A stretch of 11,479 nt of DNA, taken from contig NW_021826983.1 of the NCBI RefSeq assembly GCF_006345805.1, positions 1 to 11,479 on the forward strand, written 5' to 3'. This document shows, piece by piece, positions 508-10,996 of the stretch; position 1 is the first letter of the stretch, and each line of letters opens with the position of its first letter. The DNA comes from Octopus sinensis (taxonomy: Eukaryota). The notes below the pieces were generated by a model. It was not told the DNA's origin. It did not search any database and saw nothing but the letters and a program-made list of their open reading frames with translations. The position numbers were made by a program, and so were the translations under genes.

Positions 508-575
508 TATGACTGAGGTATCTGTACAAATCTTTTTTTCGAAAAAGTAACACAATGATGCACAAACATATTCAT
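508..575 (+). pseudogene. Relict degenerate C2H2 finger overlapping the start codon
   Basis: tat gac TGA ggt atc tgt ac- aaa tct ttt ttt cga aaa agt aac aca atg atg cac aaa cat att cat reads YD*GIC(x)[16 protein letters not shown]. The first Cys position is TGA and 1 nt is missing after the second Cys. C-x12-H-x3-H spacing is otherwise exact, and TGEKP follows. Confidence 0.7.
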
Positions 576-1226
576 ACAGGAGAGAAACCGTATCCTTGTG
601 ATATCTGTGGTAAATCATTTTCTAGCGGTGTTCACTTATCTACACACAAATATATTCATACAGGAGAGAAGGAATATCACTGTGATGTCTGTGGTAAATC
701 ATTCTCTGCAAGTAGTACCCTAACAAAACACATATGTCTTCATACAGGAGAGAAGCCATATCACTGTGATGTCTGTGGTAAATCATTCTCTGCAAGTAGT
801 ACCCTAACAAAACATATATGTCTTCATACAGGAGAGAAGCCATATCACTGTGGTGTCTGTGGTAAATCATTCTCTGCAAGTAGTACCCTAACAAAACACA
901 TATGTCTTCATACAGGAGAGAAGCCATATCACTGTGATGTCTGTGGTAAATCATTCTCTGCAAGTAGTACCCTAACAAAACACATATGTCTTCATACAGG
1001 AGAGAAGCCATATCACTGTGATGTATGTGGTAAATCATTCTCTGCAAGTAGTACCCTAACAAAACACATATGTCTTCATACAGGAGAGAAGCCATATCAC
1101 TGTGATGTCTGTGGTAAATCATTCTCTGCAAGTAGTACCCTAACAAAACACATATGTCTTCATACAGGAGAGAAGCCATATCACTGTGATGTCTGTGGTA
1201 ATCATTCTCTGCAAGTAGTACCCTAA
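555..1226 (+). CDS. Portion open as literally written: 223 aa with 7 complete C2H2 fingers, truncated by the first 1-nt deletion near 1200
   Basis: ORF track 555..1226. It contains the divergent finger at 591 plus array units 1-6. In unit 7, ggtaaatca reads ggtaatca, shifting to NHSLQVVP*. This is the product only if that deletion is real. Confidence 0.5.
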
Positions 1227-7200: not shown

Positions 7201-10200
7201 CATACAGGAGAGAAGCCATATCACTGTGATGTCTGTGGTAAATCATTCTCTGCAAGTAGTACCCTAACAAAACACATATGTCTTCATACAGGAGAGAAGC
7301 CATATCACTGTGATGTATGTGGTAAATCATTCTCTGCAAGTAGTACCCTAACAAAACCATATGTCTTCATACAGGAGAGAAGCCATATCACTGTGATGTC
7401 TGTGGTAAATCATTCTCTGCAAGTAGTACCCTAACAAAACACATATGTCTTCATACAGGAGAGAAGCCATATCACTGTGATGTCTGTGGTAAATCATTCT
7501 CTGCAAGTAGTACCCTAACAAAACACATATGTCTTCATACAGGAGAGAAGCCATATCACTGTGATGTCTGTGGTAAATCATTCTCTGCAAGTAGTACCCT
7601 AACAAAACACATATGTCTTCATACAGGAGAGAAGCCATATCACTGTGATGTCTGTGGTAAATCATTCTCTGCAAGTAGTACCCTAACAAAACATATATGT
7701 TTTCATACAGGAGAGAAGCCATATCACTGTGATGTCTGTGGTAAATCATTCTCTGCAAGTAGTACCCTAACAAAACACATATGTCTTCATACAGGAGAGA
7801 AGCCATATCACTGTGATGTCTGTGGTAAATCATTCTCTGCAAGTAGTACCCTAACAAAACACATATGTCTTCATACAGGAGAGAAGCCATATCACTGTGA
7901 TGTCTGTGGTAAATCATTCTCTGCAAGTAGTACCCTAACAAAACACATATGTCTTCATACAGGAGAGAAGCCATATCACTGTGATGTCTGTGGTAAATCA
8001 TTCTCTGCAAGTAGTACCCTAACAAAACACATATGTCTTCATACAGGAGAGAAGCCATATCACTGTGATGTCTGTGGTAAATCATTCTCTGCAAGTAGTA
8101 CCCTAACAAAACACATATGTCTTCATACAGGAGAGAAGCCATATCACTGTGATGTCTGTGGTAAATCATTCTCTGCAAGTAGTACCCTAACAAAACACAT
8201 ATGTCTTCATACAGGAGAGAAGCCATATCACTGTGATGTCTGTGGTAAATCATTCTCTGCAAGTAGTACCCTAACAAAACATATATGTTTTCATACAGGA
8301 GAGAAGCCATATCACTGTGATGTCTGTGGTAAATCATTCTCTGCAAGTAGTACCCTAACAAAACTCATATGTCTTCATACAGGAGAGAGCCATATCACTG
8401 TGATGTCTGTGGTAAATCATTCTCTGCAAGTAGTACCCTAACAAAACACATATGTCTTCATACAGGAGAGAAGCCATATCACTGTGATGTCTGTGGTAAA
8501 TCATTCTCTGCAAGTAGTACCCTAACAAAACACATATGTCTTCATACAGGAGAGAAGCCATATCACTGTGATGTCTGTGGTAAATCATTCTCTGCAAGTA
8601 GTACCCTAACAAAACACATATGTCTTCATACAGGAGAGAAGCCATATCACTGTGATGTCTGTGGTAAATCATTCTCTGCAAGTAGTACCCTAACAAAACA
8701 CATATGTCTTCATACAGGAGAGAAGCCATATCACTGTGATGTATGTGGTAAATCATTCTCTGCAAGTAGTACCCTAACAAAACACATATGTCTTCATACA
8801 GGAGAGAAGCCATATCACTGTGATGTATGTGGTAAATCATTCTCTGCAAGTAGTACCCTAACAAAATATATGTCTTCATACAGGAGAGAAGCCATATCAC
8901 TGTGATGTATGTGGTAAATCATTCTCTGCAAGTAGTACCCTAACAAAACATATATGTCTTCATACAGGAGAGAAGCCATATCACTGTGATGTCTGTGGTA
9001 AATCATTCTCTGCAAGTAGTACCCTAACAAAACACATATGTCTTCATACAGGAGAGAAGCCATATCACTGTGATGTCTGTGGTAAATCATTCTCTGCAAG
9101 TAGTACCCTAACAAAACACATATGTCTTCATACAGGAGAGAAGCCATATCACTGTGATGTCTGTGGTAAATCATTCTCTGCAAGTAGTACCCTAACAAAA
9201 AACACATATGTCTTCATACAGGAGAGAAGCCATATCACTGTGATGTCTGTGGTAAATCATTCTCTGCAAGTAGTACCCTAACAAAACACATATGTCTTCA
9301 TACAGGAGAGAAGCCATATCACTGTGATGTCTGTGGTAAATCATTCTCTGCAAGTAGTACCCTAACAAAACACATATGTCTTCATACAGGAGAGAAGCCA
9401 TATCACTGTGATGTCTGTGGTAAATCATTCTCTGCAAGTAGTACCCTAACAAAACACATATGTCTTCATACAGGAGAGAAGCCATATCACTGTGATGTAT
9501 GTGGTAAATCATTCTCTGCAAGTAGTACCCTAACAAAACACATATGTCTTCATACAGGAGAGAAGCCATATCACTGTGATGTATGTGGTAAATCATTCTC
9601 TGCAAGTAGTACCCTAACAAAACATATATGTCTTCATACAGGAGAGAAGCCATATCACTGTGATGTCTGTGGTAAATCATTCTCTGCAAGTAGTACCCTA
9701 ACAAAACACATATGTCTTCATACAGGAGAGAAGCCATATCACTGTGATGTCTGTGGTAAATCATTCTCTGCAAGTAGTACCCTAACAAAACACATATGTC
9801 TTCATACAGGAGAGAAGCCATATCACTGTGATGTCTGTGGTAAATCATTCTCTGCAAGTAGTACCCTAACAAAACACATATGTCTTCATACAGGAGAGAA
9901 GCCATATCACTGTGATGTATGTGGTAAATCATTCTCTGCAAGTAGTACCCTAACAAAACACATATGTCTTCATACAGGAGAGAAGCCTTATCACTGTGAT
10001 GTCTGTGGTAAATCATTCTCTGCAAGTAGTACCCTAACAAAACATATGTCTTCATACAGGAGAGAAGCCATATCACTGTGATGTCTGTGGTAATCATTCT
10101 CTGCAAGTAGTACCCTAACAAAACACATATGTCTTCATACAGGAGAGAAGCCATATCACTGTGATGTATGTGGTAAATCATTCTCTGCAAGTAGTACCCT

Positions 10201-10996
10201 AACAAAACACATATGTCTTCATACAGGAGAGAAGCCATATCACTGTGATGTCTGTGGTAAATCATTCTCTGCAAGTAGTACCCTAACAAAACACATATGT
10301 CTTCATACAGGAGAGCCCATATCACTGTGATGTCTGTGGTAATCATTCTCTGCAAGTAGTACCCTAACAAAACACATATGTCTTCATACAGGAGAGAAGC
10401 CATATCACTGTGATGTCTGTGGTAAATCATTCTCTGCAAGTAGTACCCTAACAAAACACATATGTCTTCATACAGGAGAGAAGCCATATCACTGTGATGT
10501 CTGTGGTAAATCATTCTCTGCAAGTAGTACCCTAACAAAACATATATGTTTTCATACAGGAGAGAAGCCATATCACTGTGATGTCTGTGGTAAATCATTC
10601 TCTGCAAGTAGTACCCTAACAAAACACATATGTCTTCATACAGGAGAGAAGCCATATCACTGTGATGTCTGTGGTAAATCATTCTCTGCAAGTAGTACCC
10701 TAACAAACATATGTCTTCATACAGGAGAGAAGCCATATCACTGTGATGTCTGTGGTAAATCATTCTCTGCAAGTAGTACCCTAACAAAACACATATGTCT
10801 TCATACAGGAGAGAAGCCATATCACTGTGATGTCTGTGGTAAATCATTCTCTGCAAGTAGTACCCTAACAAAACACATATGTCTTCATACAGGAGAGAGG
10901 CAATATCACTGTGATGTCTGTGGTAAATCATTCTCTCAAAGTACTGACTTCAAAAGACACAAACATATTCAAACAGGGGAGAAAGGAAAAGGGTAG
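555..10996 (+). CDS. Giant tandem C2H2 (Kruppel-type) zinc-finger protein; frameshifted as assembled (about 3,486 aa if indels are corrected)
   Basis: ATG at 555 with A at -3. Continuous C-x2-C-x12-H-x3-H fingers joined by TGEKP linkers run to an in-register TAG at 10994-10996. Reconstruction: 40 aa leader + 122 x 28 aa + 30 aa tail. The net indel sum across the array is -19 nt, with 24 units carrying frameshifts. No substitution creates a stop in the finger frame. Zinc-finger identity is secure; whether the full ORF is intact is not. Confidence 0.75.
591..659 (+). other. Unique intact N-terminal C2H2 finger [23 protein letters not shown]
   Basis: All four Zn ligands are present. Helix residues -1 S, +2 V, +3 H, +6 T differ from the array. 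It is followed by the variant linker TGEKE. Confidence 0.92.
5630..8057 (+). repeat. Higher-order block copy A (units 60-88), paralogous to 8477-10903
   Basis: Shares the ordered series of diagnostic unit variants with units 94-122 (see findings). Confidence 0.75.
8477..10903 (+). repeat. Higher-order block copy B (units 94-122), paralogous to 5630-8057
   Basis: GTA, GTA+CAT, GTA+CCT and CAT+TTT(Leu>Phe) units occur in the same order and spacing as in copy A, offset by about 34 units. Confidence 0.75.
10904..10996 (+). other. Unique terminal degenerate finger [23 protein letters not shown] plus tail TGEKGKG and stop
   Basis: Preceded by the variant linker TGERQ. The first 33 nt equal the array consensus, then the helix diverges (-1 Q, +3 D, +6 R). 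The second His position is CAA (Gln). TAG is at 10994-10996. Confidence 0.9.

What the first reader, a model, noticed from the sequence alone, without database searches (positions are those of the whole stretch)
555..10996. A zinc-finger gene with 122 copies of one finger: a homopolymeric polydactyl array
Seen: one 28-aa finger repeated 122 times with near-total nucleotide identity between unique flanking fingers. Established: polydactyl C2H2 proteins normally have a few to a few dozen fingers with diversified recognition helices, and PRDM9's 84-bp minisatellite-like array has on the order of ten fingers that vary at the contact positions. Inference: an array this long and this uniform is extreme. 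It is either a roughly 3,500-aa repeat-binding or scaffold protein, or a satellite born from coding sequence.
Basis: partly seen in the sequence, partly recalled or inferred. Interest (0 to 1): 0.85.

Follow-up and report, generated by a model that had tools for sequence, protein, structure and literature searches.

The report
Runaway zinc-finger repeat in octopus gene
In one young copy of an octopus zinc-finger gene, a single 84-base finger unit has been copied 122 times in a row; the repeat is real in the assembly, but its reading frame is broken 23 times (probably by sequencing error) and nothing shows that a giant protein is made.

Summary
The repeat is there. There are 122 near-identical 84-bp C2H2 finger units (655-10883, 98.9% identical to their consensus) between one unique first finger and one unique last finger, followed by a TAG stop at 10994-10996. 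It is not a single open frame as assembled: 23 units carry frameshifting indels, and the longest ORF in the finger frame is 223 aa.

The window is a whole unplaced 11.5-kb scaffold of the PacBio-based Octopus sinensis assembly. It lies inside a 96-98% identical segmental duplication. Sister copies with the same flanks hold only 3-4 fingers, of varying identity, and some of them are broken. The amplified finger occurs nowhere else in the 2.72-Gb assembly.

Variants shared between units include a linked pair copied five times. Four of the five shared variants are synonymous (P about 0.009). Indels outnumber singleton substitutions and lie mostly in homopolymer or dinucleotide runs.

I read this as a real, recent, gene-derived coding minisatellite of the PRDM9 kind, at about ten times the scale and with no diversification of the DNA-contact residues. 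The frame breaks are probably long-read consensus errors. Whether it is transcribed or translated is untested. Predicted proteins with up to 133 fingers exist in databases, so the finger count is not unique; the uniformity is. Interest is moderate.

The parts
1..554 (+). 5' flank: non-coding part of a multi-copy segmental duplication. It contains a purine-rich 23-bp tandem at 426-471.
   Evidence: It is 95-97% identical to 7 other loci and 77-92% identical to at least 30 more in the same genome. Homology of the paralogs continues upstream of the window start, so the contig end is arbitrary. TRF row 1 gives the tandem.
513..570 (+). Start of the open frame: remnant of a degenerate half-finger ([14 protein letters not shown]) followed by ATG ATG (555, 558) and [10 protein letters not shown].
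   Evidence: The frame-3 stop at 510 and the ATG at 555 come. The same exon start, [18 protein letters not shown](H/R)IH, is seen in all paralogs.
571..654 (+). Unit 1: unique first finger ([24 protein letters not shown]).
   Evidence: It has 19 differences from the array consensus. The protein is identical to the first finger of paralog C10256.
655..10883 (+). 122 near-identical 84-bp finger units (consensus [28 protein letters not shown]). Frameshifting units start at 1159, 1662, 2165, 2248, 3003, 3509, 3594, 3677, 4267, 4602, 5441, 6030, 6113, 6196, 6531, 6782, 7033, 7283, 8374, 8793, 9127, 9969 and 10051. In-frame 81-bp units start at 10302 and 10635.
   Evidence: The unit-specific 32-mer occurs 114 times in the genome, all on this contig, plus one 1-mismatch site in a paralog on C1.
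10884..10967 (+). Unit 124: unique last finger ([23 protein letters not shown]), conserved across the family.
   Evidence: The same last finger is found in paralogs on C3790, C11425, C10256, C1, C4 and C20.
10968..10996 (+). C-terminal tail IQTGEKGKG and the TAG stop (10994-10996).
   Evidence: The same tail and stop are present in the paralogs.
10997..11479 (+). 3' flank, or 3' UTR-like sequence, of the duplicated segment. ATTAAA lies at 11233.
   Evidence: It is 97-98% identical to 4 unplaced contigs and 92-95% identical to loci on C1, C4 and C20. ATTAAA was found. In C3790 versus C11425 the duplication ends about 0.6 kb past the stop.

Best explanation
This is a gene-derived (coding) minisatellite. 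One 84-bp finger unit has been amplified to 122 head-to-tail copies inside the finger-encoding exon of a young member of an octopus-specific C2H2 zinc-finger family. The likely mechanism is repeated out-of-register exchange or replication slippage between the 84-bp units, the same mechanism that changes finger number in PRDM9. The amplified units take the place of the one or two internal fingers seen in sister copies.

Shown here:
- the array itself;
- its genic flanks;
- the short (3-4 finger) sister copies;
- the fact that the unit is confined to this locus;
- unit variants that were copied within the array.

Inferred:
- the mechanism of amplification;
- that the expansion post-dates the roughly 3% divergence of the sister copies (the units differ by about 1%);
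- that most of the 23 frameshifts are long-read consensus errors that short-read polishing could not fix in a homogeneous repeat, so the true locus may hold an open frame of about 3,486 codons.

I expect the locus to be an evolutionarily transient by-product of the rapid finger turnover in this subfamily rather than a conserved functional giant protein. Expression is untested.
For: Array and flanks.

Source of the window:
- The window is the whole unplaced scaffold C3454 of a 2,719,151,902-bp, 13,516-scaffold genome.
- Those figures match the published statistics for Octopus sinensis GCA_006345805.1 (PMC10700109).
- They also match a protein hit named Octopus sinensis on a 164,836,235-bp contig, the length of C4.

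Sister copies:
- Copies with 95-98% identical flanks have only 290-375 bp, 3-4 fingers, between those flanks.
- Their internal fingers differ from copy to copy, and one (C10256) has a tandem duplicate of the last finger. Unit gain, loss and swapping is therefore ongoing in this subfamily.
- The duplicated segment is at least 7.4 kb long at 96-98% identity. This explains why the contig stops about 0.5 kb either side of the array.

The array looks like a real locus:
- The unit-specific 32-mer is found only here (114 hits), plus one near-match. The array therefore cannot have been stitched together from reads of other paralogs.
- There are six unit types. 84C>T is always linked with 77C>T, in 5 of 5 units, and variant units are interspersed along the array. 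This means real copying of variant units, not random error.

Coding constraint: 4 of 5 recurrent substitutions are synonymous against 21% expected (P = 0.009), while 4 of 18 singletons are synonymous, which is the random expectation.

Indels look like consensus error:
- There are 28 indel events against 18 singleton substitutions.
- 28 bases are deleted against 9 inserted.
- Nearly all lie in AAA, AA, GG or CCC runs or in GA, AC or AT repeats.
- The same indels recur on different unit backgrounds.
- By contrast, several paralogs on other contigs keep open frames.
Against: - As assembled the frame is not open, and I cannot see the reads, so real frameshifts are not excluded.
- Sister copies show signs of decay: a shared frameshift in C10039 and C5:115.664 Mb, and a Cys-to-Arg change in C11175. 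First-finger differences between copies are about 6 non-synonymous to 2 synonymous, which is roughly neutral (by eye).
- No upstream exon or known domain was found in 6.4 kb upstream of the closest paralog, and the frame starts in a degenerate half-finger. The whole subfamily may be 5'-truncated pseudogenes.
- No near-identical protein exists in the 5.8-billion-protein collection in any of the three length bands searched. There is therefore no sign of annotation, of transcript-derived fragments, or of an ortholog in O. vulgaris or O. bimaculoides.
- The synonymous excess rests on only five variants.
- The scaffold is small, unplaced and probably thinly covered.
Confidence: 0.6

Rival explanations
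1. Decayed pseudogene, or a young satellite born from coding sequence. The indels are real, the array is non-coding DNA, and it expanded and drifts neutrally at a dead copy of a zinc-finger gene.
For: - There are 23 frameshifts in the sequence as given.
- Sister copies include broken ones.
- No upstream exon or domain was found.
- No matching protein exists in any database band searched.
- Differences between sister copies in the first finger look neutral.
Against: - Indel events outnumber singleton substitutions 28 to 18. This is the reverse of what germline mutation usually gives and is typical of long-read consensus error (the expectation comes from general knowledge).
- No indel type exceeds 4 copies, and the recurrent ones sit on different unit backgrounds at homopolymers, whereas substitution variants reach 5-24 copies.
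- Propagated substitutions are 4 of 5 synonymous (P = 0.009).
- The array is confined to one 10.2-kb locus with intact genic flanks and a stop codon.
Confidence: 0.25
2. Assembly artefact. The true locus has far fewer copies of the unit, and the assembler or consensus step inflated the array on a poorly supported unplaced scaffold.
For: - The window is an entire 11.5-kb unplaced scaffold.
- In this assembly only 86% of sequence is in chromosomes and BUSCO duplication is 5.2% (PMC10700109).
- Several unplaced contigs give the same scores as chromosome loci, which suggests redundant contigs.
- The indel load suggests low-quality consensus.
Against: - Long-read assemblers usually collapse tandem repeats rather than expand them (general knowledge).
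- Both unique flanks lie in one contig of ordinary long-read length.
- The array carries an interspersed map of six unit types, with a linked double variant present five times. This is what a real minisatellite looks like.
Confidence: 0.1
3. Functional giant protein. The locus encodes and expresses a protein of about 3,486 aa with 124 fingers, 122 of them sharing one recognition helix. It binds a 3-bp-periodic simple repeat or acts as a chromatin scaffold.
For: - Synonymous excess among propagated variants.
- The start ATG, last finger, stop codon and an ATTAAA signal are retained.
- The indels are plausibly errors.
- Giant polydactyl gene models exist elsewhere.
Against: - The frame is broken as assembled.
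- There is no expression evidence.
- No ortholog or related protein exists in sister octopus proteomes.
- The expansion is younger than a 3% duplication, and sister copies carry 3-4 fingers and are partly decayed.
- There is no effector domain.
- Contiguous DNA binding by more than a few fingers is sterically strained (general knowledge).
Confidence: 0.1

Closest known systems
PRDM9 zinc-finger array ('coding minisatellite')
   Same: Both have an 84-bp unit equal to one C2H2 finger, arranged head to tail in a single exon, with a first-position unit distinct from the rest. In both, unit number changes by out-of-register exchange and the units are homogenised (PMC3890296).
   Different: - PRDM9 arrays hold roughly ten to twenty fingers (general knowledge); this one holds 122 of one kind.
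- PRDM9 units differ mainly by non-synonymous changes at contact positions -1, 3 and 6 (PMC3890296). Here the propagated variants are synonymous and the helix ASSTLTK is invariant apart from singletons.
- No KRAB, SSXRD or PR/SET domain was found near this gene or its paralog.
Lineage-specific octopus C2H2 zinc-finger expansions
   Same: The window belongs to a large octopus family arranged in tandem clusters (C30 9.9-10.7 Mb, C4 39.6-39.8 Mb, C27, C21, C1 107.1 Mb). The family shares exon ends, flanks and finger sequences. Octopus-specific C2H2 expansions are documented (PMC12513265; PMC10547256).
   Different: Family members seen here carry 3-19 diversified fingers. This copy has one finger amplified 122 times.
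Giant polydactyl C2H2 gene models (Xfin-like, ZNF91/850-like, and uncharacterised 2,000-5,800-aa models)
   Same: Comparable predicted length and finger count, 75-133 fingers.
   Different: Their fingers are diversified: at most 8 share a helix, and 126 of 133 helices are distinct in the largest. Many are flagged LOW QUALITY or carry transposon domains, so some are probably run-on models.
Coding VNTRs such as mucin tandem-repeat domains (from general knowledge, not tested here)
   Same: An in-frame minisatellite of tens to more than 100 near-identical units inside one exon, with length that varies between alleles.
   Different: Those encode disordered, glycosylated repeats, where copy number is tolerated by function. 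A folded, DNA-binding finger repeated 122 times has no described counterpart.
Satellite DNA
   Same: A long, homogeneous, head-to-tail array.
   Different: This is a single 10.2-kb locus with genic flanks, and no other copies exist in the assembly. Its variant pattern suggests coding constraint.

Membership tests
C2H2 (Krueppel-type) zinc finger | CX2-4CX12HX3-5H spacing, with the conserved Phe and Leu of the hydrophobic core | tested here: met
   The consensus unit is [23 protein letters not shown]. Pfam PF00096 scores 117.7 bits against a cut-off of 25.2, with 7 stretches in the 223-aa ORF.
C2H2 (Krueppel-type) zinc finger | TGEKP-type linker joining tandem fingers | tested here: met
   HTGEKPY lies between all core units. 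Pfam zf-H2C2_2 scores 178.9 bits against a cut-off of 40.
Octopus-specific C2H2 gene family (this subfamily) | Shared exon start, last finger with stop, and flanking DNA | tested here: met
   The flanks are 95-98% identical to 7-8 loci and 73-92% identical to dozens more. The same [20 protein letters not shown] start and [20 protein letters not shown] end are present.
Intact protein-coding gene | One open reading frame from start codon to stop | tested here: not met
   There are 23 frameshifting units, and the longest finger-frame ORF is 223 aa. Whether this reflects the genome or the assembly is unresolved.
Intact protein-coding gene | Evidence of transcription or translation | not testable with these tools
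   No RNA or peptide data are reachable. No near-identical protein exists in the collection at 31-98, 123-390 or 1,917-6,100 aa.
PRDM9-type coding minisatellite | Tandem 84-bp finger units in one exon with high inter-unit identity | tested here: met
   The comparison is with PMC3890296.
PRDM9-type coding minisatellite | Inter-unit variation concentrated at DNA-contact positions -1, 3 and 6 | tested here: not met
   The recurrent variants are V, H, F and P synonymous changes plus L>F between the two His residues. There is no recurrent change in the helix.
PRDM9-type coding minisatellite | KRAB, SSXRD and PR/SET domains upstream | tested here: not met
   The window has only 554 bp upstream. ORFs in the 6.4 kb upstream of the closest paralog gave no Pfam match. 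Exons further away are not excluded.
Satellite DNA | Many copies at several loci, or very large blocks | tested here: not met
   All 114 forward hits of the unit-specific 32-mer are on this contig, with one near-match in a paralog. Unassembled sequence cannot be assessed.
Satellite DNA | Non-coding, with no constraint on reading frame | tested here: inconclusive
   Frameshifts are present, but their pattern fits consensus error. The propagated substitutions are biased towards synonymous changes.

The most novel reading that the evidence does not exclude
The true locus is an intact open frame of about 3,486 codons that is expressed. It would be a natural 'homopolymeric' polydactyl protein with 122 identical recognition helices (contact residues A, S, T, K at positions -1, 2, 3, 6). 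Such a protein would read a 3-bp-periodic simple repeat, or act as a multivalent chromatin or condensate scaffold. It would have arisen within the last few percent of sequence divergence in one octopus lineage.
Probability: 0.1. Interest if true: 0.85.

Novelty: new variant of a known kind. Interest (0 to 1): 0.42.

Why it matters
If spanning reads confirm the array, it would be the most extreme case I could find of a zinc-finger exon behaving as a minisatellite: ten-fold more units than PRDM9-type arrays and no diversification at all.

It would show in one snapshot how finger number can run away in the fast-evolving C2H2 families of cephalopods. It would also provide a natural test of whether very long identical-finger proteins can be made and tolerated.

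There is a practical lesson too. Homogeneous coding repeats on unplaced long-read scaffolds carry unpolished indels. Both 'giant protein' and 'pseudogene' calls from such sequence need checking against the reads.

Tried and rejected
- A DNA search of the genome with three consecutive units did not return the window itself, because very common words are skipped. It therefore could not show whether other arrays exist.
- I considered that the window start, AG|GTAAAT, might be a splice donor marking an upstream exon. I rejected this: the homology of close and distant paralogs runs straight through it, and the GT is not conserved in the C4 copy.
- I looked for upstream exons or domains in the closest paralog and found none.
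- I looked for a donor finger identical to the amplified unit among 30 fetched loci. The best matches were 90.5% identical. The helix SASSTLT is shared with the first finger of the C1:107.12 Mb paralog, and the KHICLH end with a C20 paralog finger. No exact source was found.
- I tested for higher-order periodicity of the 35C>A variant (adjacent and i+2 pairs) and found none.
- Private indels in the window's unique flanks, compared with the paralogs, were too few to measure the contig's error rate.
- An Rfam scan of the window gave nothing.
- The long minus-strand ORFs (up to 579 aa) are incidental. One antisense frame of the unit simply lacks stop codons.
- Literature searches for ZNF-derived satellites or identical-finger arrays returned nothing relevant beyond PRDM9.
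- The Albertin 2015 octopus genome paper is not held in the library.
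Full report
**What is in the window**

Tandem Repeats Finder reports a single 84-bp array from 571 to 10943, with 123.7 copies and 97% matches. I cut the array into units at the conserved TTCATACAG and aligned each unit to the consensus.
- Unit 1 (571-654) is a diverged finger with helix SSGVHLSTH.
- Units 2-123 (655-10883) are 122 copies of one unit.
- Unit 124 (10884-10967) is a diverged finger with helix SQSTDFKRH.
- The frame then ends [12 protein letters not shown] at 10994-10996.

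Of the 122 core units, 56 are identical to the consensus, and identity to the consensus over all of them is 98.9%. The consensus translates to [28 protein letters not shown], a textbook CX2CX12HX3H finger with a TGEKP linker. Pfam zf-C2H2 and zf-H2C2_2 score several-fold above their cut-offs.

The finger frame is not continuous.
- 23 units have a frameshifting length (83 bp in 15, 82 bp in 3, 85 bp in 2, 86 bp in 3). Two more are 81 bp.
- The ORF that starts at ATG 555 stops at 1226, giving 223 aa. No + strand ORF is longer.
- The long minus-strand ORFs are incidental, because one antisense frame of the unit has no stop codon.

**Where the window comes from**

The window is the whole of scaffold C3454 in a genome of 2,719,151,902 bases in 13,516 scaffolds. 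Those numbers are the published statistics for the Octopus sinensis assembly GCA_006345805.1: 13,516 scaffolds, 2719.2 Mb, 86% in chromosomes, BUSCO duplication 5.2% (PMC10700109). In addition, a protein hit named Octopus sinensis lies on a contig of 164,836,235 bp, which is the length of C4. From general knowledge, that assembly was built from PacBio long reads and Hi-C. So this is an unplaced 11.5-kb scaffold of a long-read assembly.

**Context in the genome**

- Both flanks are repeated. The 5' 554 bp match seven other loci at 95-97% and at least 30 more at 77-92%. The 3' 490 bp behave alike.
- In the closest copies (C3790, C11425, C11175, C10256) the same flanks are only 290-375 bp apart and enclose 3-4 fingers.
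- Those internal fingers differ from copy to copy: SQSNDLKK + IQQSAVSI, or DSSQLPRH + SQRAALST. C10256 has a tandem duplicate of the last finger.
- More distant members on C1, C4, C20 and elsewhere have 4-19 diversified fingers with the same exon start ([21 protein letters not shown]) and the same last finger and stop.
- C3790 and C11425 are collinear over at least 7.4 kb at 96-98%. The window therefore lies wholly inside a segmental duplication, which explains why the assembler could not extend it.
- Homology of the paralogs runs through the window's first base, so the contig end is arbitrary.
- Some sister copies are damaged. C10039 and C5:115.664 Mb share a frameshift, and C11175 has a Cys-to-Arg change.
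- ORFs in the 6.4 kb upstream of C3790 match no Pfam family.

**Is the array real?**

I cannot see reads, but three features argue for a real locus.
1. A 32-mer specific to the unit's helix region occurs 114 times in the whole genome, all on this scaffold, plus one 1-mismatch site. That site is the first finger (SASSTLTTH) of the 19-finger paralog at C1:107.12 Mb. Reads carrying this finger therefore come only from this locus and could not have been borrowed from paralogs.
2. Both unique flanks lie in one contig of ordinary long-read length.
3. The array has an internal variant map like a genuine minisatellite. There are six unit types: canonical 82, 35C>A 17, 35C>A+77C>T 7, 77C>T 6, 77C>T+84C>T 5, and 50C>T 5. 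They are interspersed along the array. 84C>T is always linked with 77C>T. A double variant present in five separate units is inheritance by copying, not random error.

**Are the frameshifts real?**

The evidence leans towards consensus error.
- There are 28 indel events against 18 singleton substitutions in 10,229 bp, with 28 bases deleted and 9 inserted.
- Almost all lie in AAA, AA, GG or CCC runs or in the GAGAGA and ACACATAT stretches.
- The indels that recur do so on different unit backgrounds, and none exceeds four copies. Substitution variants reach 5-24 copies.
- From general knowledge, germline mutation gives far fewer indels than substitutions. Long-read consensus error gives mostly homopolymer deletions. 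Short-read polishing fails where reads map to 122 identical places.
- Several paralogs on other contigs do keep open frames.

**Is there coding constraint?**

Of the five substitution variants found in two or more units, four are synonymous: GTC>GTA, CAC>CAT, TTC>TTT and CCA>CCT. One is a conservative L>F.
- Only 21% of possible changes in the unit are synonymous, giving P = 0.009.
- Restricting the test to changes from C, P is still 0.037.
- Singletons are 4 of 18 synonymous, exactly the random expectation, as errors or very new mutations would be.

This supports the view that the array grew while it was being read as protein, but five variants are a thin basis. Against it, the first-finger differences between sister copies look neutral, and part of the subfamily is decaying.

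**How unusual is it?**

I built a conceptual translation by keeping substitutions and restoring unit length. This is a conceptual repair, not the sequence as given. It has 3,486 aa and 124 fingers.
- Searched against about 5.8 billion proteins in the 1,917-6,100 aa band, it found 1,163 C2H2 proteins. None was from an octopus and none was more than 56% identical.
- Among the best 120 there are gene models with 75-133 fingers, but the same helix never occurs more than 8 times in one protein.
- Searches in the 123-390 aa and 31-98 aa bands found nothing above 63% and 77% identity.

The finger is therefore not seen in annotated or read-derived proteins of this or sister species. Finger number is not unprecedented among predicted models. 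Uniformity is.

**Interpretation**

The best-supported reading is a recent, gene-derived coding minisatellite. Out-of-register exchange or slippage between 84-bp units is the mechanism described for the PRDM9 finger array (PMC3890296). It is visibly active in this subfamily, as shown by finger swaps and a duplicated last finger. Here it has run away in one copy.

Unit divergence is about 1%, against about 3% between sister copies. This places the expansion, or its last homogenisation, after the duplication.

Unlike PRDM9, there is no diversification at the contact positions and no effector domain nearby. I put about 0.8 on the array being real at roughly this size, and about 0.5 on the true frame being open. 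I put about 0.1 on an expressed, functional giant protein.

If it were made, the contact residues (A, S, T and K at -1, 2, 3 and 6) repeated 122 times would favour a 3-bp-periodic target. That is inference from the general recognition code and was not tested.

**Verdict**

The gene-length ORF is not confirmed. This is a new, extreme variant of a known kind (a coding minisatellite in a zinc-finger exon), sitting on a weakly supported scaffold. Interest is moderate until spanning reads and expression data are examined.

Noticed in passing
window 426-471: A purine-rich imperfect 23-bp tandem (GAGAGAAAAAATAAGAGAAAAGA, 2 copies) in the 5' flank. It is conserved in all close paralogs.
   Followed up: partly
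G000:C10256 (L005, minus strand, locus 1207-1542): The closest paralog has a first finger identical in protein to the window's, and it carries a tandem duplication of the last finger ([48 protein letters not shown]). This is a two-copy miniature of the same process.
   Followed up: partly
G000:C10039 (L006) and G000:C5:115,662,817-115,666,372 (L008): These two copies share the same frame break after the first finger (..KPIHT / ERKYHC..). C11175 (L003) has a Cys-to-Arg change in its last finger. Part of this young subfamily is therefore decaying. C5 also holds two inverted copies about 11 kb apart (115,653,137 + and 115,664,317 -).
   Followed up: partly
G000:C12650 vs C30:12.88-12.89 Mb; C10898 vs C27:12.17 Mb; C9038 vs C30:9.91 Mb: These unplaced contigs give exactly the same scores and alignment spans as chromosome loci in three separate searches. 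This suggests redundant contigs or haplotigs in the assembly, in line with its reported 5.2% BUSCO duplication.
   Followed up: no
paralog loci L002-L008, 1.5 kb upstream of the window-equivalent start; L039, L040: The sequence upstream of the window's first base is conserved at 93-100%, even between distant paralogs on C1 and C4. It may be a transposable element or part of the family's duplication unit. C3790:451-823 is a long (CA/TG)-rich simple repeat.
   Followed up: partly
P0180 (Callosobruchus analis, 5,667 aa), P0152, P0122, P0121: Public gene models exist with 75-133 C2H2 fingers, nearly all with distinct helices. Several are flagged LOW QUALITY, and others among the top hits carry reverse-transcriptase or integrase domains, so some are probably run-on or transposon-fused models.
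   Followed up: partly
window 655-10883, minus strand: One antisense frame of the unit has no stop codon ([28 protein letters not shown]...). This produces minus-strand ORFs of up to 579 aa, which are by-products of the repeat.
   Followed up: yes
L044 (G000:C1:41.78 Mb) and proteins P0044, P0037: More distant family members start their finger exon with a short N-terminal peptide (MEKSEK.KELI...) before the first finger. The window's subfamily starts inside a degenerate half-finger, which suggests a 5'-truncated derivative.
   Followed up: no
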